From: Octopus bimaculoides
Lineage: Eukaryota
DNA length: 48,197 nt
Direction: 5' to 3'
Assembly (NCBI RefSeq): GCF_001194135.2
Contig: NC_068983.1
Span: 137,507,169 to 137,555,365, forward strand
Both the position numbers and the translations under genes were made by a program. The notes under the pieces are model-generated. The model was not told the DNA's origin. It saw only the letters and a list, made by a program, of their open reading frames with translations, and did not search any database. How positions within the stretch are numbered: the first letter of the stretch is position 1; each line of letters starts with the position of its first letter. Positions 9,077 to 43,620 of this stretch are shown here, in pieces.

Positions 9077-9355
9077 ATGATGCCTCGATCACGATCTATG
9101 AGTGTTGAGCAACGACGGCAAGAAAGTGTAAGAAGAATGCGAAGGTTGCGGGCAAGAGAAACGGCAGAGAAGATTGCAGAACGAAGAACCAAAAACAGAA
9201 TCAGAATGCAACTGATACGAGCAGCAGAAACTTCTGAAAAGAAATTTAGACGACAAACCATAGACAGAATTAAAAAGCGACAAAAACGGGCAGCTGAAGC
9301 TTCACAAGAGACATCAAAACGTATCCAACTGATACAGACAGCAGAAATAAATTTG
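9077..9355 (+). CDS. BTB gene 1, predicted exon 1: STPR-like 23-aa repeats
   Basis: ETAEKIAERRTKNRIRMQLIRAA and ETSEKKFRRQTIDRIKKRQKRAA (23 aa each); donor TTG|GTTTGT at 9356 is phase 0 and matches the phase-0 acceptor at 14220; the link is inferred. Confidence 0.6.
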
Positions 9356-9660
9356 GTTTGTTTCCTTCTTCTTTTGGTTTGGTAACCTTATTCGGGTAAA
9401 AATTCGTGCCTGTTACTTAGCACTCAAGTATACGTAATATAAAATCGACAGGTTATGTTGTAGCTTAATACTGCATTCCCTTTAACGAGGCACACGGCTC
9501 CACATCATATGTGCTTGTCGTAGACATCGATAAAGTCTACTTTTAGCTGTCATCCTCTTAGGCTTCTTATCCTCTTTTTAGTCAAACACTTACACAGCTT
9601 AATTCAGTTCAATTAAAAAGCATGGGTAAGCAACGCAATGTAAGCCACATTAGAATTGGC

Positions 9661-9756
9661 GAAAAATTTATCTGTGCACAGGGTATGCATTGCTCCTCTG
9701 ATGCCTTGTTTTTATAATTCTGTATAGATTCACTTACATGCTACAACTATTACTAG
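9661..9756 (+). mobile_element. 3' end fragment of the Helentron-type element
   Basis: Shares gtgcacagggtatgcattg and ctattaCTAG with 7470-7531; followed by T. Confidence 0.45.
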
Positions 9757-10599
9757 TTTGTTTAGTCCCAGATCAACCATAAGTAAGCAGGCTTTATTAA
9801 AAGAATTCTAGATATGATCATCTTGCTTTTTTTTTAATCAGACATAGTTTATCAACTACATCCAATATAGCCTTCCCTGTTTTTAAAGATAATAGAATGG
9901 GGTTTAAACTAGCCATATCCGGTCCAAACATTCTACTTATTTTATATTCAGCCATGTAGATTTAACCTCTCACACCTACCTAATAAACAATCACATCTTC
10001 AAAATTTCAAAGCTGTGAGGTAATGCATGGTTAATTCAAAGCAAAATGAATAAATAAGCATCAAATCCGACAGAGTAATCCGAATGCTAAAGAGTTAAGA
10101 GAGATTTAGCTGCTAATTATAACAGGTTGACTGACCAGAGAGAGAGGCTCCCTCATTGGCTCATTCAATGAGGTGCTCTTTGTTGTCTTGTGTTATCTGT
10201 TGGTACTACTATGGTTTATGCTCCACTGAACTAGTAAGCTGTGCTTCACCACTCCTTCCTTTATCATTCTTCTTTTGTCTCACTCTCTAACCATGCACTT
10301 TACTCAATCCTCCTCCAGATTTGCAAACCTTTGGATACCTTTCCCTAATCAGGTTTTATCAAGTTGGATATCTATCATGCTGATGACACCAGTATGGGAG
10401 GATTCTGCTCTTTCTCTTTCAACTAAATTCTTCAAAAGTCATGCACACCATTTTAATAAGACCTGTTGATGGAGGAATGATGCTGAATGAAAGTTTGAGG
10501 TGTATTGTCAATATTGCTAGGACAATAGGTTTTAGAAACTGAAGAAATTAAAATAATATTACATAAAACATGGAAAAATATATATTAGTAAATGGTTTG

Positions 10600-10900
10600 G
10601 TGTTGGATAAAAAAAAAGGTAGATCCTGGTGTGTGTATATTAAAGAATGGAGGAAAGACCTGTATCCAGGCCTTTACAGGGTCTTCTAGAACAATGAAAT
10701 TGTGGTTAATGTTTCTATTGAGCAGTTGTAAGTCAATGGCTTCAGAGGAAAAAAAAAAAAACGTGCTGAGCAGGAATTTGCAGAAGGATAACATTCTGGG
10801 GGAGAAGTGATTAGGAATAGTGGTCGGTGTGGTACTTTATGAGGGCGGAAAACAATATGGGTGAGGTGGTGAAAAGATGAGTGAGTTGGGATACCTTTGT
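10600..10900 (-). mobile_element. Possible Penelope-like RT remnant
   Basis: Degenerate minus-strand motifs HRPLFLITSPPECYPS...LKPL...SLIYTH resemble RPIVS...LKPL...SLYTNI. Confidence 0.35.
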
Positions 10901-10977
10901 GAAGGTTGCATGAGATGAGCCATCTTCTGTAGTAGCAGTAAAAAAAAAAAAAAAGACGGAGAGTGGATATTATAACA

Positions 10978-11539
10978 CGAGGTAGGCCCAGGAAGACATG
11001 GGCTGAGGTGGTGAGGCAAGACCTTCGTACATTGGGCCTCACCGAGGCGATGACTACTGACCGAGACCTTTGGAAATGTGCTGTGCGTGAGAAGACCCGG
11101 CAAGCCAAGTAAGATCGTTGCCAGTGCCCCTGGACTGGCTCTTGTGCGGGTGGCACATAAGATGCACCATTTTGAGCGTGGCCGTTGCCAGTACCGCCTG
11201 ACNNNNNNNNNNNNNNNNNNNNNNNNNNNNNNNNNNNNNNNNNNNNNNNNNNNNNNNNNNNNNNNNNNNNNNNNNNNNNNNNNNNNNNNNNNNNNNNNNN
11301 NATTTCGAGCGTGGCCGTTGCCAGTATCGCCTGACTGGCCTTCGTGCAGGTGACACGTAAAAGCACCTACTACACTCTCTGAGTGGTTGGCGTTAGGAAG
11401 GGCATCCAGCTGTAGAAACTCTGCCAAATTTAGATTGGAGCCTGGTGTTGCCATCCGGTTTCACCAGTCCTCAGTCAAATCGTCGAACCCATGCTAGCAT
11501 GGAAAGCGGACGTTAAACGATGATGATGATGATGATGAT
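10978..11539 (+). mobile_element. RTE LINE 3' end with (GAT)n tail
   Basis: GRPRKTWAEVVRQDLRTLGLTEAMTTDRDLWKCAVREKTRQAK*, then a 3' UTR ending ggaaagcggacgttaaacgatgatgatg; same family as 37666-38013. Confidence 0.85.
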
Positions 11540-11559
11540 CAGTGAACCAGGGTTATGTT

Positions 11560-11900
11560 GATAAGCAACTTCATAACTATCAGTTCAGGATCTTTCTTTG
11601 GATACATCTCCCAGATGTTTGTTTATGTGGCGGCAGCACCATCCCTGAAGTATTTTCCAGTGTTGAAGAGGAAAGTTAATCTCTGCTATGCTGAGGAGGT
11701 GTGTTCAGCAAGAAAAATCATCAATGATGATGTGGCCTAGCATTTGTAGTGACATTGAAGGTTCTATCTGCATGTTGTTCATGTTTAATAGTGGAGGTAT
11801 GACAATGTTTGCATGACATGTAGTGATTGTGACTTTATTGTTGAACAAGACAAGATTATTAAGTAGTAAAACTCTGGTACCCTCTAGGGCAATCAATGCT
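11560..11900 (-). mobile_element. CR1-type RT C-terminal remnant
   Basis: Minus ORF 11705-11896 NLVLFNNK...PPLLNMNNMQIEPSMSLQMLGHIIIDDFSC*THLLSIA fits the NLVxFN...LG..I..DLSW..HI pattern. Confidence 0.45.
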
Positions 11901-13380
11901 AAAAATCATGTTTGGTTGACCTTTGACTCCACTGCCACCCTCAGGCTAATGTCTTCCTGCACACTATAATATCCATCAGGCTTGTAACACACACACAAAC
12001 ACTCGCCATCACATCAGTGTGTTTACATAAATACATCTGTATACATCCACTTTTTTTCTTATTTTGATCATTGAATCTGGAAGAACAGAGCCTGTGAGCC
12101 TTGTGGGTCCTCTGATATGCTGAGATTGATGTTATTAATATTAATTTTAAACTGTTGTAGGGCAATTCCTGTAAGAAAGACCTAAGTAAGAATGTCTTGG
12201 GGAGGAAGGATTGGAAATAGTGGTTTGTGTGAGAAAGGTGGTTGGGTAGGGTAGATGCACCAAAGGTGATGAGAGATAAAGAGGTGAGCAGGTCGGTGAT
12301 GCCTGAGTAAATATACCCATGCATTGCAGCCCTATATTAAGAGCCACACTTACCAACACTTGTACATAACTATGTCCACAAGCATGTTTGTGCACACACA
12401 CATGCAAACTATTATCAACACCTCTTACATACTCATCCATATTCATAAGATACACTGCCTATTCTAAAATCATGTTACTATGTGTGCACACACACACACA
12501 CACACATGTATGCATATAGGGAATAAATGTCAAATTGAAGAAGAAGACAAAAAAGAACTCAATACAAAAGTGTAGAGTCTGATATCTTAATTAAATAGAT
12601 GAAGTATCCCTCAGTTACATTACAACTTATAGTTTCATCATTTCCAGTTCCTCAAGTAATGGTTAAAATCTTCCTCTCATGTTGATTGTTAGAATAATAA
12701 TGAAGAAAAATGTTGTCTCCTTATTGTTTGAATTGTCAGACTTGTGTTTCTACTGCCTTTCTGTTGCATTACTTTTGTGTTGGTGTATTCACTTCTGTAT
12801 TGAAATACATGCATCTTTATGTATCTATGAATGTTGGTGTATTTAACAATATTGTTTTTAGTATATGGTTACAGATATTTTATTTTAAATATTCATTTGA
12901 CTAATAATGTATTTCTATATTTCCCTTGTACCTAATCTATTGCTGTGAAATCTTTCCCACCCCTCATCTTCCTAACACCCATCCTTCCATGACTCTTCTA
13001 ACTATGGCTGCAACCATACAAGAGCAGAATCTGCATGTCTCCTCACCCTCTTGTGCTATTAGTTAGCTCTCCCTGGAGCAGATGTTTCACAAATGTCATA
13101 TTGGCAGTGTGATGGAACTCCACAATTTCTACCAGAGCTGACCATGTTGAGACATGCTTATCAACCTCTGCATTTTGTCCAGTTTTTACTATGGCAAATT
13201 TGTGAGAAACAAAGCAGGTTATCATTTTTGGGGCTACACACACACGCACGCGCATTTATAAAAAGTCACTCAACGTAACAAATATAAAACAATCTTTAAA
13301 CATACTTGTGTGCTGTTTCCGCCTTTATTTTTTTAGCTACAACTTTTGATTTGTATAGATACTTAACTCCTTTTTCAACT

Positions 13381-13441
<61 letters not shown>
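13381..13441. repeat. (TA)n(CA)n microsatellite
   Basis: Directly visible. Confidence 0.95.
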
Positions 13442-13443
<2 letters not shown>

Positions 13444-13650
13444 CATCATTTAGTGTCTGTTTTCCATGCTGGCATGAGTTAGATGGTTTGACTAGAACTG
13501 GTAAGCCAGATAGCTGTACCAGGTTCCAGTCTGATTTTAGCTTGGTTTCTGTGGCTGGATGCATTTTCTAACACCAACCACTCCAAGAGTGTCTTTGGAA
13601 CAGGTTTCTTTGTGTCACTGTCACGGGTGCCTTTTACATGCCATTGGCAT
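13442..13650 (-). mobile_element. RTE-tail SINE / LINE 3' UTR copy
   Basis: catcatttagtgtctgttttccatgctggcatg...ggatgcattttctaacaccaaccactcc is the reverse complement of the RTE tail at 11380-11539. Confidence 0.75.
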
Positions 13651-14219
13651 GGGTGCTTGTGTATATATATATATAAAGAGAAAGAGAGTTGGTGATAAAA
13701 CAGGCATTGGACTGTAGAAGCTATGTCAAATAATTGAAGCATATGATTGAGATTGTCGACTCTGCAACCTGCATCACAACTACCTGTTTAGACAGTTAAT
13801 AATTGTTAATATGAACTGAATATAGGGTAGATAGAGACTTTTGTTCTTCCTACATCTGGCAACCCCAGTAGTGCCGTTGGCTCAATAAAATCAGTTATTC
13901 CACACTGTAAGACATACACACCAGCAAAATTTGTCATTTTCCTCTGTTCTTCTCATTTTGTAGGCTCTTTGCAAAATGACATAGAGTGGGACAAATGAAC
14001 TATTCAAACCTGCCAGAATGGAAAATGGATATCAAGTTATGTTAATTTTGTGTGTGTGTATGTGTACTACAATAAACACATCTTGTTACATAGATAAGCT
14101 GTTTTAACCTGGCTTGTGAATCTCATGTCTACTTTTTCATGTGTCTGAAATCAAGTTTTGGATATTGCTGTTATATAAATAATTTTCATTTTAGTAAAAA
14201 AAAAAAATTTTATTTATAG

Positions 14220-14401
14220 TTGCAGACAGATAATTTAATGGAAGATCATTATGGAAAAACTGAAAAATTGCAAAATAAAATGATGTATGTTATGAATAAC
14301 TCTTCTGCAACTGTGCACATTGCAGATGAATCACCTCTTCAACCATCAGCACCAAAAGTCCAGAAAAGGCAGATCAATGATCAGCAATTAGATGATAATT
14401 G
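14220..14401 (+). CDS. BTB gene 1, exon 2
   Basis: Acceptor tttatag| at 14219; open frame LQTDNLMEDHY...DDNW; phase-2 donor TG|GTATGT; the same intron position is used in paralogs 2 and 3. Confidence 0.75.
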
Positions 14402-14494
14402 GTATGTGATAATTAAAATTGGAATTTTGGTAATTAAATTTGCATCCTATTTGTGTGTATTTCATTTATATTATTTACAAATTTTACATTTTAG

Positions 14495-14756
14495 GCAAAT
14501 AAATATTGTTCCAGCATCTCAGGTATCTGCAAAATCTATCCAGGATACTTCTCACACGACAGTCCAGCAACATTCAAGTGTTGCCGAAACATCTCAAATA
14601 AAAGTGTCTAAAAGAAAACCTGTGGAAAAAAATCCACGGAAACAGATATTTGTAATTGCTGATTATCAGCGCCATGTGATGTCTAACATTGCTTCGCTGT
14701 GGAAGGATAGAAAACTGTGTGATGCTAGTATTAGTAATGGTTCATCTGCTGTGATG
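14495..14756 (+). CDS. BTB gene 1, exon 3 (N-terminal part of BTB)
   Basis: Acceptor ttttag|G; encodes ...ADYQRHVMSNIASLWKDRKLCDASISNGSSAVM; donor ATG|GTAAGT (phase 0). Confidence 0.85.
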
Positions 14757-15439: not shown

Positions 15440-16378
15440 GTACATAAAGTTGTCCTGTTTGCTGTGTGTCCAAAATTGTTGTCAGTATTTAGTACAAATA
15501 TCCACTCTCGCAATTTTCTTGTAATTAACTTTCCAGAGGAAGTAAGTACACAAGCTTTAAATGCCTTTGCTGAATACATGTACAATGGATTATTAGATCT
15601 TGATCCAGGTATTTTACATCAGTTGAAAATCATTGCAAAACATTTGGACATGAAAGAATTTGAACAACTGTGTAATAGTCGTCTTCCATATAAAATATCT
15701 CAACCATCTATTTCAACATCTACTCTATTAGGTGACCATTGCAGCACACAGACCGAACTATCAGTTCCACCAGTTCAACCACCTCTACCGTCATCATCCA
15801 TCATTTCAGTTACATCTCAGTCTACTCCATCCATCACTATACAAGCATTTGATATTAAACAAGAGCCTTCTGAGACTGAATTACCAACTGTCTTCAGACA
15901 AGAATCTGAGATTGGACCACTGAATAGTAGTACAAATAACTCTTCTGAAAATGTTTGCATGGCTTCTAGTGTGAAAATTGAACCTGTAGGGCCCGAAGAT
16001 GACGAATATGGTCACCTGAATAAAGATTTTGATACATCTACAGTTTCAAATGAAGCAACAACAAATATAATACGTGGAATAACAGCTAAATTAAAATCTA
16101 ATGTATTTGAAAGTTCTCTAGTTTCTGACTTATCCCCTGTTTCATGCATTGTAGAAAAAATGTGTTCTCAGTCCAGTCCCATTAGAGAAGACCCTTCCAA
16201 ACCACTAAATCGAACTATAACAACTCAGTCAATTGACAACATTGTGACTTCTGGTAGTAATGAAGGTGTCTATCCTGTAGGACTTTTTAAAGCAGGAGGG
16301 GACGGTTTACCATTATCATCAACACAAGTTACCAATGTCAAAAGTATAAGTTTATATAAAACAAATGACCTTACTTGA
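15440..16378 (+). CDS. BTB gene 1, terminal exon (BTB core, SUMO-consensus tail)
   Basis: tttcag|GTA CAT AAA; VHKVVLFAVCPKL...AFAEYMYNG...LKIIAKHLDMKEFEQLC is a typical BTB/POZ core; IKQE and VKIE motifs; TGA 16376-16378; predicted 553-aa protein. Confidence 0.9.
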   Translation, partial: VHKVVLFAVCPKLLSVFSTNIHSRNFLVINFPEEVSTQALNAFAEYMYNGLLDLDPGILHQLKIIAKHLDMKEFEQLCNSRLPYKISQPSISTSTLLGDHCSTQTELSVPPVQPPLPSSSIISVTSQSTPSITIQAFDIKQEPSETELPTVFRQESEIGPLNSSTNNSSENVCMASSVKIEPVGPEDDEYGHLNKDFDTSTVSNEATTNIIRGITAKLKSNVFESSLVSDLSPVSCIVEKMCSQSSPIREDPSKPLNRTITTQSIDNIVTSGSNEGVYPVGLFKAGGDGLPLSSTQVTNVKSISLYKTNDLT

Positions 16379-16827: not shown

Positions 16828-16828
16828 A

Positions 16829-16878
<50 letters not shown>

Positions 16879-21756: not shown

Positions 21757-22873
21757 CTGTCGAATCATCAAAAGAATACCAAAAAAAAAAAAATAGTTGA
21801 AAATCACTGATCTAAACAGACTAAGAATCTCGGGAACTAGTGACGATCTGCTTCAGCAAAAATCAGTTCATGATGTTCGATGTAAGTTTGAAAACACGAA
21901 TTCTAAAGTTTCGAATATAGCCATTTTTCGGAGAGAGGTAGATAATTCACATATTTGAAGTAAGAGCTAAACTGTAAATAATCTGAATGTCATTTGAAGT
22001 CGTGAAATCATCGTGGGCGGCCACAGGAATTTAAAGTTCCGATTTAGAATATTTTCCAGGCTAAAAAGTAAATAAGAAATAAAAGCGATGTTACTGTGGA
22101 AGTCGAGTTGAGATTTAAAAGAAAAACATTCAGTATATCTACAACATATAAAAGTGGCAACTGTTAAAATATTTGTTATACAACAAAGTACTACTAATTA
22201 AAATATGAATTTACCAAGATTATTTTATTCTGAAAGTGTGGAAAGGCGAGTTTGTTTCTTTCACGCCAACTCGGCAAAGTGTTGATAGTAAGCAACGAAA
22301 CTGACCTGAAAGAGATCGTAAAAAGAAAAGTTAACAGTTGGTCAGCATTATAGGATAAGATCTCGAAATGTAACCCTATAAATTATTTTTTCTTTTCGTT
22401 TTAATGATTGTCGTTCTGTCCCAAGTCAACTATGACCGGAGATCTATGATCAGAAGCATTCAGGGTAAGGACCGTTCCATCTTTTAGGAAGTATAGGCTT
22501 ATAATAGGTTTACTTAATATAAAGTATCCTTTCCTTATTTAAGAAGGTAGGATGTGATTTGAAGGAGATCTAAAAAAGATTGGTATAACTGGCTGATGTA
22601 ATAAGAGAACAAAACTGTTTTTTTGTTATAATCTACAGTAAAGTTTTAACAGTGAAAAATGCGGAAAAGTTTTTATTGGATCATGCGAACAGCTCTGCAC
22701 CGTTTCTGTTAGATTGTTACAATAACAAGTCAAGTCCTTGGGAGTATAAATTACATTTGTTATAAAAGATTTGACATCGGTAAAGGCAGACACTAATAAA
22801 ATAATAATAAAACGTATATAAAAATTTATCATCAACATTCAAAGTGGAGGTAAACGCTATATATTTGGACAAG

Positions 22874-23278
22874 ATGAGCAGAAAAAGACATGAGATGTCT
22901 GCCGAGGAGAGAGAGCAGGTGAGGGCGAAAGATAGACAAAGAAGAGCCAAGAAAAGGCAGGCGATGTCTCCTGAAGAAAGGGCAGAGCGATTAGCCATGG
23001 AAAGGCAAAGAATTGCCAGAATAAGACAGACGATGTCTGTTGAAAAAAGACAGGAGGTACGAGACAAGGAAAGGCTAAGAATGGCGAAAAGGAGGCAGGC
23101 GATGACTGATGAAGAGAGAAAGGAACTACTGGTCAAGGATAGGCTAAGATTCGCCAGGAAAAGGCTGGCACGACTTGCTGAAGAAGGGCAGGGTTTGCTG
23201 GCTAAAGACCGACAGATGAAGATGAGAAGGAAACAGATGGCCAGGAATGAGAACGTTAGAAATCAACAAAGAATGTTT
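22874..23278 (+). CDS. BTB gene 2, predicted exon 1: 4-5 STPR-like 23-aa repeats
   Basis: Repeats start at 22895, 22964, 23033, 23102 (69-nt period), e.g. MSPEERAERLAMERQRIARIRQT; strong phase-0 donor TTT|GTAAGT at 23279 matches the phase-0 acceptor at 27982; the link is inferred. Confidence 0.7.
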
Positions 23279-27308: not shown

Positions 27309-27981
27309 GTTAACAAATGAATGTTATTAAATTTTTAGATTCATAGGTAACTTTTCAGACACTGTATATTTACTAATTTAGTTTTGAGTTACAGGTGGTC
27401 TTGTTTTGTGAATTATTTAGTGACTTCATTAGTGTCAGGGGCATGTAAAAAGTACCCCAGTACACTCTGTGAAGTTGTTGGTGTTAGGAAGGGCATCCAG
27501 TCATAGAAATCATGCTAAAACAGACATTGGAGCTTGGTGCAATCCTCTGGCTTGTCAGTTCCTGCCAAACTGTCCAGTTTATGCCAGCATTGAAAATGGA
27601 CATTAAACAATAATGATGATGAATTTTTTTTATATAAGTTGAAGCGATTTTATAAAACCTGATGGTTTCTGTGGTTAGTAACTGTCCTGTTATTTTTTCA
27701 TTTAATGTTTCCTTCTGGGAACAATATTTCTTAGATCTGTTAATAAACCTTATGTTTCTTTACAAATTTTTTCTTTCTAAAGATTTTTCATGAGTGAGTG
27801 GATGAAATAATCATGAAAGACATTTGTTACTACTATACACTTTTTATCTACTGCATTTATGTGAAATAGCTTCATTTAAAATTGAAGAGGCTGATTTACT
27901 TAGGCCAATAATAACCACTTTTAAATTCATTACAAAGCAAACTATTCTTTATGATATTCATGTATCTATTTATACTTTCAG

Positions 27982-28073
27982 GCAGAATCATCAAATCAGT
28001 GTTATTCAGAATACATGAAGCAACAATATACAGAGCAGGTGCGGACTGGTGATCAAATATTTGATCCTGATAG
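27982..28073 (+). CDS. BTB gene 2, exon 2
   Basis: Acceptor actttcag|GCA; open frame AESSNQCYSEYMKQQYTEQVRTGDQIFDPD; phase-2 donor AG|GTATGT. Confidence 0.7.
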
Positions 28074-28162: not shown

Positions 28163-28430
28163 ACACATGATTAGCTCTCGGGTATCCCAGATAATTGCAA
28201 ATTCTCTTCCAACTGCTACTCAAATGCCAGTCCAGCAGTGTATGAATGTTGCTCAGTCATCACAGATACCTGTACCCAAACCAAATGGTGTTAGGAAGCC
28301 TTGGCATAAAAAGAAAAGAATACTTGCTGTTGCTGATCATCAGATCCATGTCATGTCCAACCTGGCAGCACTGTGGAAAAGTAAAAAATTGTGTGATGCT
28401 AGTATTGGTAATGGCTCATCAACTGTAATG
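28163..28430 (+). CDS. BTB gene 2, exon 3 (N-terminal part of BTB)
   Basis: Acceptor tttcag|A; ADHQIHVMSNLAALWKSKKLCDASIGNGSSTVM; donor ATG|GTAAGT. Confidence 0.85.
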
Positions 28431-29341: not shown

Positions 29342-30310
29342 GTACATAAAGTTATTCTATCTGCTGTGTGTCCAAAACTATTGTCAGTATTTAGTACAAA
29401 TATTTCCTCTCAGAAGTTTCTCCAAATAAACTTTCCAGAAGAAGTTAGTACACAAGCTTTAAATGCATTTGCAGAATACATGTACAGTGGATATTTAGAT
29501 CTCGATCCAGATATTTTACAGCAATTAAAAATCATTGCAAAACGATTAGAAATGAAAGAATTTGAAGAACTGTGTGATAACAATCTCATAAACAAAATAA
29601 ATCAACCTTCAGTTGATCTCAGGCAGAACCAGACACAGACCAGTCTGCCAGTTCCAACAAATATCACAGTGCCAACAATTCAACCAACTCTGCCTTCATC
29701 ATCCATCACATCAGTTACATCTCAATCTACTCCATTTGTCACTACACAAGTCATTGATGTTAAACAAGAGATATGTGAGGCTGCGTTAGCACAAGTTAAC
29801 ATTGGTACTGCTGATGTCTTTGAACAGGAATCTGAAATTGACTCATTGGATGCTAATACATATGGTCATTGCTCAAATGATTCTGATTTTGTTCTCAGAG
29901 TGAAAACTGAACCTGTAGAGCTTGATAATGAGAACTATGGTCAACTGAACAACGAGGCTTACATATCCACTCCAGATTCAAGCAATGCAGCATCACATGT
30001 GATACATAGACCCACATGTAAATTAAAGTCTAATGTATTTGAAGGCTCTGTAGTTTCTGACTTACCTCCTGCATCATGCATTGAAGAGAAAATGTCTTCC
30101 CAGTCCATTTCCATACAAAATGATGCATCTAAAATGCTACACCAAAGTATAACAACTATCCAGTCAATTGAGAACATTATGACATCTGGTAGTAATGAAG
30201 GTCTCTATTCTGTAGGACTTTTTAACGCAGGAGGGGACAATGTACCATCATGTACACAACTTACAAATTTCAAACATGTAGGTTTATGTGAAGCAGATGA
30301 TCTTACATGA
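29342..30310 (+). CDS. BTB gene 2, terminal exon
   Basis: tttcag|GTA CAT AAA; BTB core VHKVILSAVCPKL...EYMYSG; VKQE and VKTE motifs; TGA 30308-30310; AATAAA at 30627; predicted 577-aa protein. Confidence 0.9.
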   Translation, partial: VHKVILSAVCPKLLSVFSTNISSQKFLQINFPEEVSTQALNAFAEYMYSGYLDLDPDILQQLKIIAKRLEMKEFEELCDNNLINKINQPSVDLRQNQTQTSLPVPTNITVPTIQPTLPSSSITSVTSQSTPFVTTQVIDVKQEICEAALAQVNIGTADVFEQESEIDSLDANTYGHCSNDSDFVLRVKTEPVELDNENYGQLNNEAYISTPDSSNAASHVIHRPTCKLKSNVFEGSVVSDLPPASCIEEKMSSQSISIQNDASKMLHQSITTIQSIENIMTSGSNEGLYSVGLFNAGGDNVPSCTQLTNFKHVGLCEADDLT

Positions 30311-35023: not shown

Positions 35024-35290
35024 ATGTCTCCGAAGAAAACACGCAAATACTGCTCTATATGCAGGCACTATAGAGGGAAGAATGTAGACGGCAAAGTTAT
35101 TTCACTACATAGATACCCTGCAAACGTAGCTATTCGTCGTATTTGGCTTCAGAGATCGAGACTTGCGAGGAAAGACTTTGTTTACACTGCAAATAGCCAA
35201 ATGTGTTCCCAGCATTTCGTCAATTTTAATGGACCATCGAAAGATCACCCCTTGCCATCCATTTTTCCAAACAAAGTATTTAAAATATCA
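35024..35290 (+). CDS. THAP zinc-finger exon (exon 1 of a THAP / ISL2EU-Harbinger-like transposase derivative)
   Basis: MSPKKTRKYCSIC...LHRYP...IW...MCSQHF...LPSIFP carries the THAP C2CH, W, F and P hallmarks at the N-terminus; phase-0 donor TCA|GTAAGT; ATTGG at 34930. Confidence 0.9.
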
Positions 35291-36310: not shown

Positions 36311-36481
36311 TTGTTTGATTAAATAATAAATTTACAGCATTGAATCTAATATTCCTCTAATTATTAGACTTTATAGTGTAACTATCCCTATCTCTTCTAC
36401 ACCTCATCATGCTCATGGCCAAATCAGTGAACGGCTGCTGAAAGCTATGCCCACGTAAAACCGTATTTAACTTATTTGCAG

Positions 36482-37027
36482 AATATACAACTGAATGGAT
36501 GTCCAGAAGATATTGAGACCAACGAAGTCGAAGATATGAATGTTACAGAACAGCTTGGTTGCTTCGTAAGTTCTACCATGTCTATGTTGAACAATTCTTT
36601 AATGTTTCATGATTACTGTGGTTCAGTTAATCCTGAATCAGTCTCAGCATTTACACACAAGTCAGTGCAGACTGTACAAGAAATTGGTACCAAGGAAATA
36701 GGAATACAATGTGATCCTGCCAATAAACCTATTTCTACAAATAGCAGTACTCAGATGTTAGAAAGTAAGATGGTGGATCGTGAAATGCAAGCAAAAATAC
36801 CTGTGCTTACATATGAAGATATGCAAAATGATAATCAGAAGCTTCTCTTTTACACAGGAATACCAGATTCCATGACTTTTGATTGTCTTTTTGATACAAT
36901 TAAAGATGATGCAGCAAGTGAAACTGCCAGACATGGTGCATCATCAGAGCAAGGGAGACCCAGACAGCTTCGATTAATTGATCGCCGCCAGAAAGTGAAC
37001 GTTGAGGCGAGCTGGCAGAAACGTTAG
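36482..37027 (+). CDS. THAP gene exon 2: linker and truncated HTH region of an ISL2EU/Harbinger-like transposase; no DDE domain; stop supplied by a SINE
   Basis: Acceptor tttgcag|AAT (phase 0); HDY, SVQT/GIQCD, KLLFYTGIPDSMTFDCLF and GRPRQLRLID motifs; 270 aa in total with exon 1. Confidence 0.75.
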   Translation, partial: NIQLNGCPEDIETNEVEDMNVTEQLGCFVSSTMSMLNNSLMFHDYCGSVNPESVSAFTHKSVQTVQEIGTKEIGIQCDPANKPISTNSSTQMLESKMVDREMQAKIPVLTYEDMQNDNQKLLFYTGIPDSMTFDCLFDTIKDDAASETARHGASSEQGRPRQLRLIDRRQKVNVEASWQKR

Positions 37028-38013: not shown

Positions 38014-39636
38014 NNNNNNNNNNNNNNNNNNNNNNNNNNNNNNNNNNNNNNNNNNNNNNNNNNNNNNNNNNNNNNNNNNNNNNNNNNNNNNNNNNNNNNN
38101 NNNNNNNNNNNNNNNNNNNNNNNNNNNNNNNNNNNNNNNNNNNNNNNNNNNNNNNNNNNNNNNNNNNNNNNNNNNNNNNNNNNNNNNNNNNNNNNNNNNN
38201 NNNNNNNNNNNNNNNNNNNNNNNNNNNNNNNNNNNNNNNNNNNNNNNNNNNNNNNNNNNNNNNNNNNNNNNNNNNNNNNNNNNNNNNNNNNNNNNNNNNN
38301 NNNNNNNNNNNNNNNNNNNNNNNNNNNNNNNNNNNNNNNNNNNNNNNNNNNNNNNNNNNNNNNNNNNNNNNNNNNNNNNNNNNNNNNNNNNNNNNNNNNN
38401 NNNNNNNNNNNNNNNNNNNNNNNNNNNNNNNNNNNNNNNNNNNNNNNNNNNNNNNNNNNNNNNNNNNNNNNNNNNNNNNNNNNNNNNNNNNNNNNNNNNN
38501 NNNNNNNNNNNNNNNNNNNNNNNNNNNNNNNNNNNNNNNNNNNNNNNNNNNNNNNNNNNNNNNNNNNNNNNNNNNNNNNNNNNNNNNNNNNNNNNNNNNN
38601 NNNNNNNNNNNNNNNNNNNNNNNNNNNNNNNNNNNNNNNNNNNNNNNNNNNNNNNNNNNNNNNNNNNNNNNNNNNNNNNNNNNNNNNNNNNNNNNNNNNN
38701 NNNNNNNNNNNNNNNNNNNNNNNNNNNNNNNNNNNNNNNNNNNNNNNNNNNNNNNNNNNNNNNNNNNNNNNNNNNNNNNNNNNNNNNNNNNNNNNNNNNN
38801 NNNNNNNNNNNNNNNNNNNNNNNNNNNNNNNNNNNNNNNNNNNNNNNNNNNNNNNNNNNNNNNNNNNNNNNNNNNNNNNNNNNNNNNNNNNNNNNNNNNN
38901 NNNNNNNNNNNNNNNNNNNNNNNNNNNNNNNNNNNNNNNNNNNNNNNNNNNNNNNTTAAATCTATTTTTAGAAATGATGATATTTTAATTTATTGTTTTG
39001 TGTGGGTTGTAGGGATAAGATTTTTAAACCCCAGTAGGTGTTTGGCTGTTCTTAGAAATGATGCCAAATCTATTTATAGAAATGATGATATCTGAGAGAT
39101 TTTTTGTGTTTTGGTTACAGGGATAAGATTTTTAAACCCCAAGTAAGATGGATTTAATCATTGTTTGTTAAGAGTGGGTTTGAATTTCTTAATAAAGTCC
39201 TTTTCTTTGCATTTTCTTTCAATTTCATTCCGGTTATAAAGTTTATGGAATGGAAATATAATAAAAGTTTGATGACCACATGTTGCTAGATGGTTAGGAG
39301 TTCAGATTTTGAATCCAATGCAAGTTAGCATATACGATCTGAAATAGCAAGTAACGTGGCAAATTTATAAGAGTGTTCAAGGGAACTTAATCTCTTACAC
39401 TGCGTTTATAAAGAGCAATATGGTGCAAAGTGAAGACCATACACTAATATTTCAGATGAAATCTTCATATAAATACTAGTTTTCTGTACACATAATTAAG
39501 AAAGAATTATTGGTGTAATTCGTTGTTTGTAAGATTCTGATAAAAAGATATTGTACTAATTTTTTTTTAGATATCTAGAAAATGTGTGTCAATATTCTCA
39601 TAATAGGACATTTTTTTTTTCTAGAGTGATGATTTT

Positions 39637-39840
39637 ATGCCTCCCAAACTATCAGCACTGAGCCGTCTCAACAAAAATGCTAGGACAGCCAGAGAAAAAC
39701 AAAAAAATGAAACCACAGAGGAAAGGCAATTAAGATTACAAAGACAATTTGCTAGTCGGCACGCAGAAACAGCAGAACAATGGCAGGTAAGATTCGAAGC
39801 TCAGAAACAGTGGAGCAAAAGTTATCTTGCAGCTCTTAAG
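39637..39840 (+). CDS. BTB gene 3, predicted exon 1: STPR-like / Helitron N-terminus-like
   Basis: MPPKLSALSRLNKNARTAREKQKNETTEERQLRL...ETAEQWQVRFEAQKQWSKSYLAALK; phase-0 donors CAG|GTAAGA (39787) and AAG|GTAGAT (39841); the link is inferred. Confidence 0.55.
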
Positions 39841-40653: not shown

Positions 40654-40736
40654 AAAAAAAAGAACGAAACACAGCACCTTGGAGAGCAACACCTGCAGAA
40701 TCAGATGTTAAAAAATCAACAATCACATGACAGATG
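40654..40736 (+). CDS. BTB gene 3, exon 2 (5' boundary uncertain)
   Basis: Phase-2 donor TG|GTATGT as in gene 1; the first in-frame AG after the pyrimidine tract is 40652-53 (phase 0); an in-frame ATG at 40615 is an alternative start. Confidence 0.55.
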
Positions 40737-40830
40737 GTATGTGGTGACTAAAATGGTATTTTGACAATGTTATTGAGTTACTATTTTTCTTACATATTTC
40801 TTCTGAATTAATTGCAAATTTTCATTTTAG

Positions 40831-41176
40831 GCAAATGGACAGTGCTTTATCATCTCCAAAGACTTCAAAATGTGTACATCTAACAACTAAAATGCCAGTC
40901 CAGCAAGATTCAAGTTTAGCACAAGCATCTCAAAATATTACAAAGCCAGCTCAGGTGTTGACTTCACCATTTCAAATAACTCCATCCAAATCAAATCTGG
41001 TGAAAAATCCAAATCAAACAACCGTATTTAAATCAATAATTAGAAAAAAATTTTTATTGAAACGGAAATTGCTAGTTACTAGTCATCAACGTAATGTCAT
41101 GTTTAACCTAGCATCTATGTGGAGAAGTAGAAAATTATGTGATGCCAGTGTTACCAATGGCTCATCTACTGTAATG
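40831..41176 (+). CDS. BTB gene 3, exon 3 (N-terminal part of BTB)
   Basis: ttttag|G CAA; HQRNVMFNLASMWRSRKLCDASVTNGSSTVM; ATG|GTAAGT. Confidence 0.85.
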
Positions 41177-41380
41177 GTAAGTATACAGTTGTACACTTTT
41201 TCACCTTTATAAACTGTTTCAATTGTCATCACGATAGCTAAAAGATCTTGCTTGTAAGTCTAAAAGATTATGCTTAATTTCTAATGTGCTTAATATCAAA
41301 ATATTCTTTCTTCTACTTCCCTCTATATTTCTTAAAGGTAGGTTTAGCCTTTATCAGAAGTTATAGATAAAATACTTATT

Positions 41381-42082
41381 GGATCTTTCTGAATTGACGG
41401 GCACCACTTGTTTTCTTAATGAAACACTTTCAAACTTGGGATACTGGTAGAATGTCATATAAAACATCTTTTTCTCTTAGCCTTCTTAACAAAAATTTCT
41501 ACATGGCAAGTTATTTCATGTTAAAGTATTTCTGTAATTTCAACCAATCACAGACGTATATTCAGCTGAATAGAGTTACTACTGTTTTTGTAAACAATAA
41601 TTTTTGCCAGTGTCAAGATCGTTATTCCCTAGTAAGGGTTTAGGGTTTTAGGATTAGGGTTCGGGTTTTAGAGTTAGGGTTAGGATTAGGGTTATGAGTT
41701 AGGTTATGGCAAAAATAATCATAACCCTAACTCTAAAACCAGTACAAACACAGAACAATGTTATAAATAACAGTTCTGCCGATAGTTGTTGTTGACAAAC
41801 AACGGCACTAATTTTATTCAAAGGAAAAGATTCCATTACACCGCTAGAATATGTTGTTTATATTTCATAGCAGTAATTGTTTTCACCTCAATAGACGTCA
41901 GTGATTGGTTGAAATTACCGAAATACGACAATTTTTTGACATAAAATAACTTCAAATACAAAAATTTTTATCTGTTCTATAACACAAAATATACAAGTAT
42001 ACGAAGTTTGAAAGTGTTTCGGTACCAAAAACACTACATAAAACATAAATGAAAAGTGGTGCCCGTCAATTCAGAAAGATCC
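41381..42082. mobile_element. Complete 702-bp non-autonomous DNA transposon (GG-start TIRs, 8-bp TSD; Merlin-like MITE)
   Basis: TIR ggatctttctgaattgacgggcaccac at both ends; TSD tacttatt at 41373-41380 and 42083-42090; central TTAGGG/CCCTAA-like tract. Confidence 0.9.
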
Positions 42083-42426
42083 TACTTATTAAGTTTTAAG
42101 TATTATTATTATTATTAGAAAATGTAATGATGCAATCATTGAAAATAAATTTTACTAAAACATTTGCTTACTAATATAGAAAAGAATATGTTACAGAAAA
42201 AGAAAATGGAGTTGATTTAATTAAGGTATTAATGAAATAACTCTTTGAAATAATTGAAGTTTAAATCAACTTCCAGTGGCTTGAGACTTTTGGTAGTGAA
42301 TAGGTTTTGTAGAAGATGGAGAAAGATAAACTTACATTTTTCTACTTTATAAACATATTTCTTAAATGTCTATCATTGTATTGTTGGCAAGCTATAAATA
42401 TACTGTTATTATTTACTATATTTCAG

Positions 42427-43620
42427 GTTCATAAAATAGTCTTGTCTGCTGCGTCTCCAAAATTGTTATCAGTAATTAGTACACATATCTTTTCTCAGTT
42501 TTATGAAGTAAAATTACCTGAAGTAAGCACAGAAACTTTAATGGCTTTTGTTGAATACATGTATACTGGACTATTAGATCTTGATCTTAATATTTTACAA
42601 CAGCTAAAAGTCATTGCAAAACAATTAGACATGAAAGACTTACAAAATATATGTGATGTTCATCTTTTACGTGGAGCACGTCAGCAACATTCTTCAACAG
42701 TGACTGCGTTTGATGATCCTAGGCAGATGCCATCTGATGTTTCAGCTGTTGCGACAGACGATATTAAACAGGAGATTTCTCAAAATGAATCAGCAGAACT
42801 TAAAGAAGATGTGGTTAGCATCTTTGAGCAAGAGGTTGAGGCTGCATCTTCGGACACTAAGGATAGCAGCTCTCTAGTTGGTTCTGCTATTCTTCCCACT
42901 GTAAAAATCGAGCCTGTAGGACCTGATGACGACAAATATGGTCAAATGAACATGCCATCGTATGTTTCAGCTGTCCCTACAGACGATATTAAACAGGAGA
43001 TTTCTCAAAATGAATCAGCAGAACTTAAAAAAGATACAGTTAGACACTTTGAGCAAGAGATTGATGCTGCATCTCTGGACACCAAGGGTGACAACTCTCC
43101 TGTTGGTTCTGTTATTCTTCCCACTGTAAAAATCGAGCCTGTAGGACCTGATGACGACAAATATGGTCAAATGAATGAAAGAGCTTACACATTTTGTTCA
43201 GTTTCAGATAGTTCTCAGGCACTAAGCACTTCTTTGAATTCTATAGCTGTGTCCACTACAGATTTTAGCTTACCATTTTCAGATACCACAAACAGCAAAG
43301 CAACTGCAAATAAGATACATGGAACATCACCTAAATTAAAATCTAACGTATTTGAAAGTTCTCTAGTTTCTGACTCATCTGTGTCATATCGTGAAGAAAA
43401 ACTGTGTTCTCAATCTAGACTCATAAGAGAAGACCCTTCTAAACCACTAAATCGAACAATAACAACTCATTCAATTGACAACAATGAGACTTGTGGTAGC
43501 AATGAAGATGTCTATCCTGTAGGACTTTTTACAGCAGGAGGGGACAGATTACCATTATCATCAACACAAGTTACCAATGTCAAAAATATAGGTTTATATA
43601 AAACAGATGGTCTTACTTGA
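42427..43620 (+). CDS. BTB gene 3, terminal exon with 225-nt internal duplication
   Basis: tttcag|GTT CAT AAA; VHKIVLSAASPKL...EYMYTG; TGA 43618-43620; AATAAA at 43687; predicted 608-aa protein. Confidence 0.9.
   Translation, partial: VHKIVLSAASPKLLSVISTHIFSQFYEVKLPEVSTETLMAFVEYMYTGLLDLDLNILQQLKVIAKQLDMKDLQNICDVHLLRGARQQHSSTVTAFDDPRQMPSDVSAVATDDIKQEISQNESAELKEDVVSIFEQEVEAASSDTKDSSSLVGSAILPTVKIEPVGPDDDKYGQMNMPSYVSAVPTDDIKQEISQNESAELKKDTVRHFEQEIDAASLDTKGDNSPVGSVILPTVKIEPVGPDDDKYGQMNERAYTFCSVSDSSQALSTSLNSIAVSTTDFSLPFSDTTNSKATANKIHGTSPKLKSNVFESSLVSDSSVSYREEKLCSQSRLIREDPSKPLNRTITTHSIDNNETCGSNEDVYPVGLFTAGGDRLPLSSTQVTNVKNIGLYKTDGLT

What the first reader, a model, noticed from the sequence alone, without database searches (positions are those of the whole stretch)
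9077..43620. Tandem family of STPR-repeat + BTB chimeric genes (candidate new transcription-factor family)
Seen in sequence: three BTB gene bodies with identical intron positions (phase 2 in exon 2/3; phase 0 at VM|VHK), whose exon-2 frames stay open back to a splice acceptor (clear in genes 1 and 2, uncertain in gene 3). Upstream of each lies an ATG-initiated Arg/Glu-rich exon of 23-aa repeats ending in a phase-0 GT. The joins give stop-free ORFs of 553, 577 and 608 aa. Established knowledge: 23-aa E[TS]xEER...R repeats define the STPR DNA-binding domain (silkworm FMBP-1, human ZNF821), similar repeats occur near the N-terminus of some Helitron Rep/helicase proteins, and BTB is an N-terminal dimerization/corepressor module usually paired with C-terminal zinc fingers. 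Inference: a lineage-specific family with an inverted layout (DNA-binding module N-terminal to BTB), possibly built by capture of transposon-derived exons. I do not know of a described STPR-BTB architecture.
Basis: partly seen in the sequence, partly recalled or inferred. Interest (0 to 1): 0.9.

Follow-up and report, generated by a model that had tools for sequence, protein, structure and literature searches.

The report
Octopus BTB genes with STPR-like first exons
Three neighbouring octopus genes join a basic, 23-residue-repeat helical module related to a silkworm DNA-binding domain to a BTB dimerisation domain; these gene models are already in public databases as uncharacterised proteins, but the family and its swap-in DNA-binding first exons have not been described.

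Summary
The window is Octopus bimaculoides chromosome CM046603.1. It holds three tandem BTB genes: LOC106877741, LOC106877744 and LOC106877737.

The 608-aa model of gene 3 is not in the databases. RefSeq uses a stronger donor 54 nt upstream and adds a THAP exon.

All assembly gaps lie in introns or between genes. A gapless O. vulgaris assembly keeps exon order for genes 1 and 2.

The first exons are related to STPR. Evidence: 23-residue periodicity, hits to proteins that pass Pfam's STPR threshold, hhalign 97.6% probability for gene 2, and predicted 21-residue helices. None reaches Pfam's own threshold, and gene 2 lacks the hallmark Glu1/Arg9.

Each STPR exon is one of several alternative first exons. 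A paralog outside the window has at least 36 isoforms with THAP, FLYWCH, CENP-B or psq first exons. Cuttlefish transcripts carry the same STPR-like plus BTB layout.

Best reading: a cephalopod BTB transcription-factor family with interchangeable N-terminal DNA-binding exons, like lola/mod(mdg4) with the order inverted. Gene 2 is well supported. Genes 1 and 3 are weaker. No RNA junction evidence could be reached.

The parts
6551..6661 (+). Gene 1 (LOC106877741) alternative first coding exon, isoform X2 (MDCICLIS...LMYLK). No DNA-binding domain. Donor GTTCGG, phase 0.
   Evidence: tblastn of P0011 and P0002. Sequence read. The gene range in RefSeq starts here.
8434..8476 (+). Gene 1 alternative first coding exon, isoform X4 (MLKTLLKFYALFSI-). 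It splices to an internal acceptor near 14326.
   Evidence: Pattern match and reading. Protein P0041.
9077..9355 (+). Gene 1 STPR-like first exon (93 aa, net charge +18). It has two canonical 23-residue repeats with Glu1/Thr2/Arg9 plus degenerate ones. Weak donor GTTTGT, phase 0.
   Evidence: Exact match of the 553-aa join to XP_052822537.1. Period 23, z 5.5. hhalign against STPR: 83.6% probability, score 34.7 versus 10.2+-2.3 for shuffles. 92% nt identity to O. vulgaris without indels, but dN/dS 2.5.
14220..14401 (+). Gene 1 exon 2 (linker). Holds the internal ATG at 14238 used by isoform X3. Ends in phase 2.
14495..14756 (+). Gene 1 exon 3 (linker plus first half of BTB). Ends ...SSAVM in phase 0.
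15440..16378 (+). Gene 1 exon 4 (second half of BTB, disordered tail with IKQE/VKIE motifs, conserved C-terminal motif, stop).
21870..21881 (+). Gene 2 (LOC106877744) alternative first coding exon, isoform X2 (MMFD|GTAAGT).
   Evidence: Pattern match. The RefSeq gene range starts at this position. Protein P0001.
22874..23278 (+). Gene 2 STPR-like first exon (135 aa, net charge +23). It has 4-5 repeats of 23 residues of type M-[ST]-x-E-E-R. Strong donor GTAAGT, phase 0.
   Evidence: Exact match of the 577-aa join to XP_014782236.1 / A0A0L8GDU2. Same exon and junction in O. sinensis and O. vulgaris. Period z 8.5. phmmer hits to proteins that pass Pfam STPR. hhalign 97.6%. AF2 helices 10-29, 33-53, 56-76. 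94.6% nt identity with no indels, against 85.6-89.8% in the flanks.
27662..27673 (+). Gene 2 alternative first coding exon, isoform X3 (MVSV|GTTAGT).
   Evidence: Pattern match. Protein P0044.
27982..28073 (+). Gene 2 exon 2 (linker). The internal ATG at 28015 is used by isoform X4.
28163..28430 (+). Gene 2 exon 3 (linker plus first half of BTB).
29342..30310 (+). Gene 2 exon 4 (second half of BTB, disordered tail, stop).
35024..35290 (+). THAP zinc-finger exon. It is the first exon of the RefSeq model of gene 3 (LOC106877737). Donor GTAAGT, phase 0.
   Evidence: Pfam THAP 31.2 bits. P0018 maps at 100%. Splice sites read. 92% identical to a first exon of LOC106877732.
36482..36565 (+). Small exon B of the RefSeq gene 3 model (NIQLNGCPED...LGCF), phase 0-0.
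39625..39840 (+). Gene 3 STPR-like exon. RefSeq uses 39625-39786 (acceptor T10CTAG|, donor CAG|GTAAGA). It has two repeats with Glu1/Thr2/Arg9, the first shortened to 19 residues.
   Evidence: Pfam STPRs 16.2 bits, below the cut-off of 27. hhalign score 25.5 versus 9.1+-1.9 for shuffles. 61% identical to the first exon of paralog LOC106877739.
40654..40736 (+). Gene 3 exon 2. The ancestral acceptor 15 nt upstream reads CAA instead of CAG, so the AG at 40652-3 is used, in frame.
40831..41176 (+). Gene 3 exon 3 (linker plus first half of BTB).
42427..43620 (+). Gene 3 exon 4 (second half of BTB, and a tail with a 225-nt internal tandem duplication at 42727-43175, stop).

Best explanation
The window holds three tandem paralogs of a cephalopod BTB gene family.

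Shown:
- Each gene has a constant three-exon body: a linker, a BCL6/KEAP1-like BTB domain split by a phase-0 intron at VM|VHK, and a roughly 240-residue disordered tail that carries hydrophobic-K-x-E motifs and a conserved C-terminal motif.
- Each body is preceded by several alternative first exons that all end in phase 0.
- One alternative first exon per gene encodes a strongly basic, helical module of 23-residue repeats related to the STPR DNA-binding domain.
- Gene 3 additionally has a THAP exon upstream.

Inferred:
- Promoter or first-exon choice decides whether the BTB body receives a DNA-binding head.
- The STPR-like head lies along the DNA major groove, as in silkworm FMBP-1.
- The BTB domain makes homo- or heterodimers among the paralogs.
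- The tail recruits cofactors or is SUMO-modified.
- Head-less isoforms compete with or modulate the DNA-binding ones.

In logic this is the Drosophila lola / mod(mdg4) design with the order inverted: variable DNA-binding exons at the 5' end instead of the 3' end.

Gene 2 is the intact example. Gene 1's head is weakly constrained. Gene 3's head shows decay.
For: - Exact identity of the g1 and g2 joins to RefSeq X1 isoforms and to UniProt models from an independent pipeline.
- The same exon and junction in the O. sinensis and O. vulgaris orthologs of gene 2.
- Exon order is kept in the gapless O. vulgaris assembly.
- g2 exon 1 is 94.6% identical without indels, while its flanks are 85.6-89.8% identical with indels.
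- Acanthosepion (cuttlefish) models carry two alternative STPR-like heads on one BTB body, and a 1,687-nt contig has an uninterrupted ORF across the octopus intron sites.
- STPR relationship: whole-library phmmer hits at 5e-8 to 4e-4 to proteins that score 37.6-113.8 bits on PF21107.
- hhalign gives 97.6%, 83.6% and 39.5% probability for g2, g1 and g3, and every score lies far above 100 composition-preserving shuffles.
- The same STPR alignment hits FMBP-1 (PDB 5d23) at 4.6e-12.
- AF2 predicts 20-21-residue helices broken at the repeat borders, with pLDDT 81-87.
- Net charge is +18 (g1) and +23 (g2), against +12 for FMBP-1 STPR.
- BTB: Pfam and Foldseek TM 0.74-0.78 to BCL6, KEAP1 and PLZF.
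- Variable heads: RefSeq isoforms X1-X4 of both genes.
- Paralog LOC106877732 has isoform names up to X36, with THAP, FLYWCH, CENP-B_N+Tc5, BrkDBD and psq heads.
Against: - No RNA read across any exon-1/exon-2 junction could be examined. All octopus joins are computer gene models.
- No exon reaches Pfam's STPR gathering score.
- g2 has Met instead of the conserved Glu1, and Arg9 in only one repeat.
- g1 exon 1 has a weak donor (GTTTGT) and dN/dS about 2.5 (19.5 non-synonymous against 2.5 synonymous changes). It is annotated as a separate 102-aa gene in O. vulgaris.
- g3 has lost the ancestral exon-2 acceptor, carries a 12-nt deletion and three Arg-to-Trp changes, and gained an internal donor. 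Its probable O. sinensis ortholog (P0014) is modelled with a different N-terminus.
- The whole family evolves fast (body dN/dS about 0.65).
- DNA binding, dimerisation and SUMO modification are untested.
Confidence: 0.65

Rival explanations
1. The Arg/Glu-rich ORFs are decaying transposon-derived or chance-retained fragments that happen to lie upstream. Gene predictors join them because the phases fit, but the real proteins start at the exon-2 ATGs (14238, 28015, about 40639) or at the short leader exons.
For: - Isoforms without the repeat exon are annotated for g1 and g2.
- g1 exon 1 shows no purifying selection, has a weak donor, and is not joined in the O. vulgaris annotation.
- g3 shows several decay marks.
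- The open frame between acceptor and ATG is only 6-11 codons.
- STPRs are known Helitron cargo (PMC11417382).
Against: - g2 exon 1 is more conserved than its flanks, free of indels, and has a consensus donor kept in O. vulgaris.
- Three species' annotations agree on the same join.
- Cuttlefish transcript contigs carry an STPR-like head and BTB in one uninterrupted ORF.
- Several paralogs (LOC106877738, LOC106877739) have the same layout.
- No Helitron or other transposase domain was found next to the exons.
Confidence: 0.2
2. The N-terminal module is transcribed and translated but is not a DNA-binding domain. It would be a charged single alpha-helix or coiled-coil spacer, or a nuclear or nucleolar targeting region, as earlier automatic names suggest ('stress response protein NST1-like', 'caldesmon-like').
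For: - Composition is rich in Arg, Lys and Glu.
- Pfam STPR is not reached.
- g2 lacks Glu1 and Arg9, which stabilise the FMBP-1 repeat (PMC4856987).
- AF2 draws residues 79-153 as one long helix.
- Database names for g2 and for relative P0071.
Against: - A strict 23-residue period with a conserved Ser/Thr at position 2 and helix breaks exactly there.
- Similarity to true STPR proteins survives composition-preserving shuffling.
- Net charge of +18 to +23 resembles FMBP-1 STPR (+12). ER/K single helices are near neutral (own knowledge, not tested here).
- In the paralogs the same position is filled by undoubted DNA-binding domains: THAP, FLYWCH, CENP-B, psq.
Confidence: 0.12
3. The tandem genes are not independent units but one complex locus. 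In it, 5' exons of one unit can be spliced, by read-through or in trans, to bodies of units further downstream. The STPR exons would then be shared variable exons.
For: - O. sinensis isoform X2 (P0002) joins gene-1 exons up to ...SSAVM to gene-2 exon 2, and NCBI treats both as one gene there.
- All 5' exon donors, the exon-3 donor and all exon-2 acceptors are in phase 0.
- All units are on the same strand.
Against: - Only one such model was seen. It would encode a protein with one and a half BTB domains, which looks like a read-through by-product.
- In O. bimaculoides, RefSeq keeps the genes separate.
Confidence: 0.08

Closest known systems
STPR DNA-binding domain (Bombyx mori FMBP-1, human ZNF821; Pfam PF21107; PDB 5d23/5d2q/5d2s)
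   Same: Tandem 23-residue basic repeats. Ser/Thr at position 2. Predicted 21-residue helices with 2-3-residue linkers. Significant sequence and profile similarity to proteins that pass PF21107.
   Different: All three exons score below Pfam's cut-off. g2 has Met for Glu1 and mostly lacks Arg9. g1 and g3 have only two canonical repeats, whereas FMBP-1 needs three for full affinity (PMC4856987). The partner domain is BTB. The STPR proteins found here instead pair STPR with C2H2 fingers (P0069) or an MBD (P0067).
BTB-zinc-finger transcription factors (BCL6, PLZF, ZBTB family)
   Same: A BTB fold of the dimeric BCL6/PLZF type. A nuclear-regulator-like layout of DNA-binding module plus BTB plus disordered regions.
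   Different: The BTB is central, not N-terminal. There are no C2H2 fingers. The DNA-binding module is N-terminal and encoded by an alternative first exon.
Drosophila lola and mod(mdg4) loci (own knowledge, not tested here)
   Same: Constant BTB exons are combined with many alternative exons that encode different DNA-binding modules (zinc fingers, FLYWCH). This gives isoforms that can heterodimerise through BTB.
   Different: In the fly the variable exons are 3' and C-terminal and are partly trans-spliced. Here they are 5' and N-terminal, so presumably chosen by alternative promoters. In genes 1 and 2 only one of the alternative exons carries a DNA-binding module. The large repertoire is in paralog LOC106877732.
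Octopus THAP-BTB and CENP-B-BTB proteins noted by Mukherjee and Moroz 2023 (PMC10027918)
   Same: The same gene family and cluster: N-terminal transposon-type DNA-binding domain joined to BTB in Octopus.
   Different: That paper counts them as THAP or CENP-B genes and calls BTB transposon-derived. In the passages retrieved it does not describe STPR heads, the alternative-first-exon structure or the tandem cluster.
Helitron-borne STPRs (HELIANO survey, PMC11417382)
   Same: STPR repeats are a recurrent cargo of HLE1 Helitrons. That offers a source for exon capture.
   Different: No Helitron_like_N or PIF1 domain was found in the window or among the nearest relatives of the g2 exon. The link is a lead, not a result.

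Membership tests
STPR domain (PF21107) | Tandem repeats of strictly 23 residues | tested here: met
   Lag-23 self-similarity z 5.5 (g1) and 8.5 (g2). Paralog exons give z 3.0 and 10.5. g3 itself fails (19-residue first repeat after a 12-nt deletion). A 69-bp DNA period is seen in g2.
STPR domain (PF21107) | Glu1, Thr/Ser2 and Arg9 conserved in each repeat (PMC4856987) | tested here: inconclusive
   g1: two repeats have all three residues. g3: both repeats have all three. g2: Ser/Thr2 in four repeats, but Met at position 1 in all and Arg9 in only one.
STPR domain (PF21107) | Score at or above Pfam's gathering threshold (27 bits) | tested here: not met
   g3 exon scores 16.2 bits. g1 and g2 give no hit. 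Relatives P0012, P0015 and P0033 score 18-22 bits.
STPR domain (PF21107) | Significant similarity to proteins that are accepted STPR members | tested here: met
   g2 exon against 1.84 billion representatives: 4 of 7 non-self hits (E 5e-8 to 4e-4) pass PF21107 at 37.6-113.8 bits. hhalign scores are 97.6% (g2), 83.6% (g1) and 39.5% (g3) probability, with 0 of 100 shuffles reaching them.
STPR domain (PF21107) | Each repeat is a 2-residue linker plus a 21-residue helix | tested here: met
   AF2 model of g2: helices 10-29, 33-53 and 56-76 with breaks at M-S/T, pLDDT 81-87. Later repeats fuse into one helix. This is a prediction, not a structure.
STPR domain (PF21107) | Binds the major groove of AT-rich DNA | not testable with these tools
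   Needs EMSA, SELEX or a co-crystal structure.
BTB/POZ domain proteins | BTB domain above the Pfam threshold, with the BTB fold | tested here: met
   38.9, 49.4 and 52.1 bits against a cut-off of 20.5. Foldseek TM 0.74-0.78 to BCL6, KEAP1, NS1-BP and PLZF.
BTB-zinc-finger (ZBTB) transcription factors | N-terminal BTB followed by C-terminal C2H2 zinc fingers | tested here: not met
   The BTB lies at residues about 190-340 of 553-608. No zinc-finger domain was found by Pfam.
lola / mod(mdg4)-type loci | Constant BTB exons shared by isoforms that differ in exons encoding DNA-binding modules | tested here: met
   RefSeq isoforms X1-X4 of g1 and g2 share the body and differ in the first exon. LOC106877732 has isoform names up to X36 with THAP, FLYWCH, CENP-B, BrkDBD and psq heads. 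All of these are gene models, not transcripts seen here.
lola / mod(mdg4)-type loci | Variable exons are 3'-terminal (C-terminal in the protein) and can be trans-spliced | tested here: not met
   The variable exons are 5' and N-terminal. Trans-splicing is not testable here.
Helitron-derived STPR exon | Adjacent Rep/helicase remnants, or nearest relatives that are Helitron proteins | tested here: not met
   No Helitron_like_N or PIF1 hit in the window ORFs scanned or in the 7 nearest relatives. A whole-genome copy count was not possible.

The most novel reading that the evidence does not exclude
The cluster around this window (LOC106877732, -741, -744, -737, -739, -738, -745) would be a coleoid-cephalopod invention that generates dozens of BTB transcription-factor isoforms. 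It would do so by splicing alternative 5' exons onto constant BTB bodies. Those exons encode mostly transposon-type DNA-binding modules: STPR, THAP (some completed only across a splice junction), FLYWCH, CENP-B/Tc5 and psq. This would be a convergent, order-inverted counterpart of Drosophila lola/mod(mdg4), possibly with splicing between neighbouring units.
Probability: 0.3. Interest if true: 0.8.

Novelty: new variant of a known kind. Interest (0 to 1): 0.55.

Why it matters
If the isoforms are real, cephalopods evolved their own way of multiplying transcription-factor specificities: one dimerisation body and many swap-in DNA-binding heads, several of transposon type. Only arthropod BTB loci are known to me for this, in the opposite orientation (own knowledge). 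It would add STPR to the small list of DNA-binding modules paired with BTB. It would give a tractable case of exon capture and decay: gene 2 intact, gene 1 drifting, gene 3 eroding. It would also point to a lineage-specific regulator family in animals known for expanded zinc-finger and protocadherin families (own knowledge). The practical caveat is that the gene models are already public, so the new part is the reading of the family, not the sequences.

Tried and rejected
- The word-indexed protein search with the g2 exon-1 peptide alone returned nothing, although orthologs exist. The exhaustive representative search was used instead.
- A profile search with the BTB core alignment A3 returned only three fragments. 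The family's spread beyond cephalopods therefore stays unknown.
- A PDB sequence search with the g2 exon profile gave no hit. The link to FMBP-1 is transitive, through alignment A1.
- O. sinensis loci (P0003, P0002) and LOC106877732 (P0059) were not on record for DNA retrieval.
- No paper mentions run SRR8281688. The cuttlefish origin of that contig was inferred from its 90% cluster.
- I suspected that ORFs at 1554-2024, 17473-17817(-) and 37583-37873 are LINE tails. Pfam gave no hit, so this stays an impression.
- I looked for hidden DNA-binding exons (psq, the upstream STPR exon of LOC106877738, the O. sinensis gene-3 N-terminus, the shared THAP-completing exon) by relaxed tblastn. None was found in the readable sequence.
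- I rejected a recent minisatellite as the cause of the repeats: the 69-bp units match at only 74%.
- I rejected composition alone as the cause of the STPR similarity, using the shuffle controls.

Full report
**What the window is.**
The window has 35.5% G+C and nine N runs. A search with the gene-2 body found a 100% identical RefSeq protein of Octopus bimaculoides. The window is letter-identical to assembly GCA_001194135.2, chromosome CM046603.1, from about 137,507,168, over the 4,827-base overlap checked, including the gaps that fall within it. The three genes are LOC106877741 (gene 1), LOC106877744 (gene 2) and LOC106877737 (gene 3). All are on the + strand. The cluster continues downstream with LOC106877739 and LOC106877738.

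**Checking the observation.**
- The three bodies share intron positions. Exon 2 ends in phase 2 (lengths 182, 92 and 83 nt). Exon 3 ends in phase 0 at VM|VHK. All splice sites are consensus.
- Pfam finds BTB in all three at 38.9-52.1 bits against a cut-off of 20.5.
- An AlphaFold2 model of gene 2 has a confident BTB at residues 219-338. It superposes on BCL6, KEAP1, NS1-BP and PLZF with TM 0.74-0.78.
- The bodies are 74-87% identical in DNA. Intergenic stretches behind genes 2 and 3 are also duplicated, so this is a true tandem family.
- The 'frame open back to the acceptor' spans only 6 and 11 codons, so it carries little weight alone.

**The gaps.**
- A gapless O. vulgaris assembly (OX597816.1; loci L001, L003, L004) is collinear with window 2379-16850 and 21619-34629, at about 89% identity through introns.
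- It bridges the 10-N gaps at 25242 (intron 1 of gene 2) and 34413 (intergenic).
- The 99-N gap at 11203 sits in a 3.2-kb piece of gene 1 intron 1 that O. vulgaris lacks. Exon 1 and exon 2 are in the same order there, about 2 kb apart instead of 4.9 kb.
- At the 203-N gap between genes 1 and 2, O. vulgaris has about 21 kb more, including a further gene-1-like copy. Sequence may be missing from the window here.
O. vulgaris is not collinear beyond 34629.

**Are the joins real?**
An exact look-up shows two matches.
- The 577-aa protein is XP_014782236.1 (isoform X1 of gene 2, once named 'stress response protein nst1-like'), also UniProt A0A0L8GDU2.

A UniProt fragment, A0A0L8GCF1, has the same gene 1 junction. 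O. sinensis isoform X4 and an O. vulgaris protein carry the same head and the same ...QQRMF|AE... junction for gene 2.

The same genes also have isoforms with short non-domain leaders (first exons at 6551, 8434, 21870 and 27662) and isoforms that start at the exon-2 ATGs. So the STPR exon is one alternative first exon among several. I could reach no RNA reads, so all octopus joins remain gene models.

**Conservation.**
- Gene 2 exon 1 differs from O. vulgaris at 22 of 405 nt (94.6% identity) with no indel. Its flanks are 85.6-89.8% identical with many indels. The GTAAGT donor is kept and dN/dS is 0.65, like the body exons (0.64-0.68).
- Gene 1 exon 1 is 92% identical without indels and keeps its weak GTTTGT donor. 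However, 19.5 of 22 changes are non-synonymous (dN/dS about 2.5). The O. vulgaris annotation also calls it a separate 102-aa gene.

**Gene 3.**
The 608-aa model is not in the databases. RefSeq's 711-aa model (XP_014782226.1) runs as follows:
1. THAP exon 35024-35290.
2. Exon 36482-36565.
3. Exon 39625-39786.
4. Exon 2 at 40654.

Comparison with paralog LOC106877739 shows four things.
- The ancestral exon-2 acceptor (CTCAG|ATGAAAATG) reads CTCAA in gene 3. The AG 15 nt downstream must therefore be used, in frame.
- A 12-nt deletion removes four residues from the first repeat.
- A C-to-T change creates the strong donor CAG|GTAAGA that RefSeq uses.
- A T-rich tract plus CTAG acceptor lies 12 nt upstream of the ATG and is conserved in both genes. 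LOC106877738 isoform X1 appears to use it to add another STPR exon in front.

The probable O. sinensis ortholog (P0014, which shares the tail duplication) is modelled with a different N-terminus. Its exons map just after the collinear block in O. vulgaris and are not found in the readable window. Gene 3's 5' end is therefore unresolved, and its STPR exon looks eroded.

**Is exon 1 an STPR domain?**

- *Periodicity.* z is 5.5 for g1, 8.5 for g2 and absent for g3. The paralog exons give 3.0 and 10.5.
- *Key residues.* Two g1 repeats and both g3 repeats have all three. g2 has Ser/Thr2 but Met at position 1, and Arg9 only once.
- *Pfam PF21107.* It is never reached: 16.2 bits for g3, nothing for g1 and g2, and 18-22 bits for relatives.
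- *Exhaustive search.* A phmmer search of 1.84 billion representatives with the g2 exon found eight proteins at E up to 1e-3. One is its own ortholog. Four of the other seven pass PF21107 at 37.6-113.8 bits. They are two bryozoan proteins (one also with an MBD), a perch protein with C2H2 fingers, and a hookworm 'STPR domain-containing protein'.
- *Profile comparison.* An alignment of those four STPR regions hits FMBP-1 (PDB 5d23) at 4.6e-12. It aligns to g2 with 97.6% probability (score 70.6), to g1 with 83.6% (34.7) and to g3 with 39.5% (25.5). One hundred composition-preserving shuffles of each give 9-10.5 +- 2 and never exceed 20.
- *Predicted structure.* AlphaFold2 draws helices 10-29, 33-53 and 56-76 with breaks at the M-S/T repeat borders, at pLDDT 81-87.
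- *Charge.* The heads are strongly basic: +18 for g1, +23 for g2 and +8 for g3, against +12 for FMBP-1 STPR.

I conclude the heads are STPR-related. g2 is a divergent Met-Ser/Thr subtype that also occurs in the far-upstream exon of LOC106877738 (E 5.5e-5) and in an insect protein (P0071).

**The wider family.**
- Paralog LOC106877732 has RefSeq isoform names up to X36. Its variable N-termini score as THAP (five tested), CENP-B_N plus HTH_Tnp_Tc5, FLYWCH, BrkDBD, HTH_psq, and weakly as a Tc1-type HTH.
- LOC106877745 has a FLYWCH head.
- The THAP exon and the small exon in the window are 92% and 81% identical to first exons of LOC106877732 isoforms X4 and X7.
- Outside Octopus, a 90% cluster links Logan contigs to two Acanthosepion pharaonis proteins that carry two different STPR-like heads on the same body.
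- One 1,687-nt contig has 5' and 3' untranslated ends and an ORF that runs uninterrupted across the octopus intron sites, which is what a transcript looks like.
- Other Logan contigs carry psq/CENP-B-type heads on the same BTB body.
- The head-plus-BTB design is therefore found in both octopods and a cuttlefish, which suggests it predates their divergence.

**Origin of the heads.**
The literature reports STPRs as stable cargo of HLE1 Helitrons (PMC11417382). In O. vulgaris the extra gene-1-like copy has an STPR ORF fused in frame, without an intron, to the middle of exon 3. That ORF is the closest relative of the gene 1 head (E 1.9e-6). This fits repeated capture of such modules. But no Helitron domain was found near any head or among its relatives. 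The origin remains an inference.

**What is known already.**
No paper that contains both 'STPR' and 'BTB' concerns such a protein. Mukherjee and Moroz 2023 (PMC10027918) noted that Octopus THAP and CENP-B factors mostly carry BTB. In the passages retrieved there was no mention of isoform structure or STPR heads. The proteins themselves are public as 'uncharacterized' or 'BTB domain-containing'.

**Verdict.**
- The more interesting point is the family-level design: constant BTB bodies with alternative first exons that supply different DNA-binding heads, an order-inverted analogue of lola/mod(mdg4).
- Mechanism steps: domain content, exon structure and relatedness are shown. Transcription of the joins, DNA binding, dimerisation and the role of head-less isoforms are inferred.

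Noticed in passing
outside the window: LOC106877732 isoforms (P0048, P0049, P0052 and others): Several THAP first exons end at ...C-S-K. The shared next exon begins HFVGGNGPTRDHPDPLP. So the final His of the C2CH zinc site and the proline-rich box appear to be supplied across a splice junction by a common exon.
   Followed up: partly
window 35024-35290 and 36482-36565: The THAP exon and the small exon after it are 92% and 81% identical in protein to first exons of LOC106877732 isoforms X4 and X7. The variable 5' exons themselves have therefore been duplicated within the cluster.
   Followed up: partly
window 36476-37027 (+): An ORF of 183 aa reads through the donor of the small exon and contains LLFYTGIPDSMTFDCLF. 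From memory this resembles the region after THAP in some transposases. Pfam found nothing.
   Followed up: partly
window 41648-41708: A degenerate TTAGGG-type (telomere-like) array of about nine units lies inside intron 3 of gene 3.
   Followed up: no
window 42727-43175: A 225-nt tandem duplication (89% match) in the last exon of gene 3 doubles a 75-residue tail segment with IKQE and VKIEP motifs. The O. sinensis protein P0014 has the same doubling.
   Followed up: partly
window 31688-33046 vs 44575-45958, and 33934-34349 vs 47768-48197: Intergenic DNA behind gene 2 is repeated behind gene 3 at 83% and 93% identity. The duplication unit therefore included non-coding flanks.
   Followed up: no
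L003 10001-16310 (O. vulgaris), opposite window gap 20277-20479: O. vulgaris has an extra gene-1-like copy. Its STPR-like ORF is fused in frame, without an intron, to the 3' part of exon 3. About 21 kb there corresponds to 2.2 kb in the window, so either the window assembly is collapsed or O. vulgaris gained a copy.
   Followed up: partly
L001 8768-8911 (O. vulgaris): An inverted partial copy of the gene 2 STPR exon lies about 1.1 kb upstream of the exon itself in O. vulgaris. It is absent from the window.
   Followed up: no
O. sinensis protein P0002 (LOC115209901 isoform X2): This model splices gene-1 exons (up to ...SSAVM) onto gene-2 exon 2, in frame because all these junctions are in phase 0. 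It is either read-through or real inter-unit splicing.
   Followed up: no
C-termini of all three genes (e.g. window 16100-16375, 30040-30307, 43350-43617): A conserved terminal motif (KLKSNVFE..., YPVGLF.AGGD.LPL, ...LYKTD.LT) is shared by the octopus paralogs and some unidentified Logan contigs. AlphaFold2 predicts it as disordered and it has no Pfam match. It may be a short partner-binding motif.
   Followed up: no
window 17194-17447 vs 37921-37666 (inverted); ORFs 1554-2024, 17473-17817(-), 37583-37873: These are interspersed repeat copies. Their ORFs look to me like tails of LINE reverse-transcriptase proteins, but Pfam gave no hit.
   Followed up: partly
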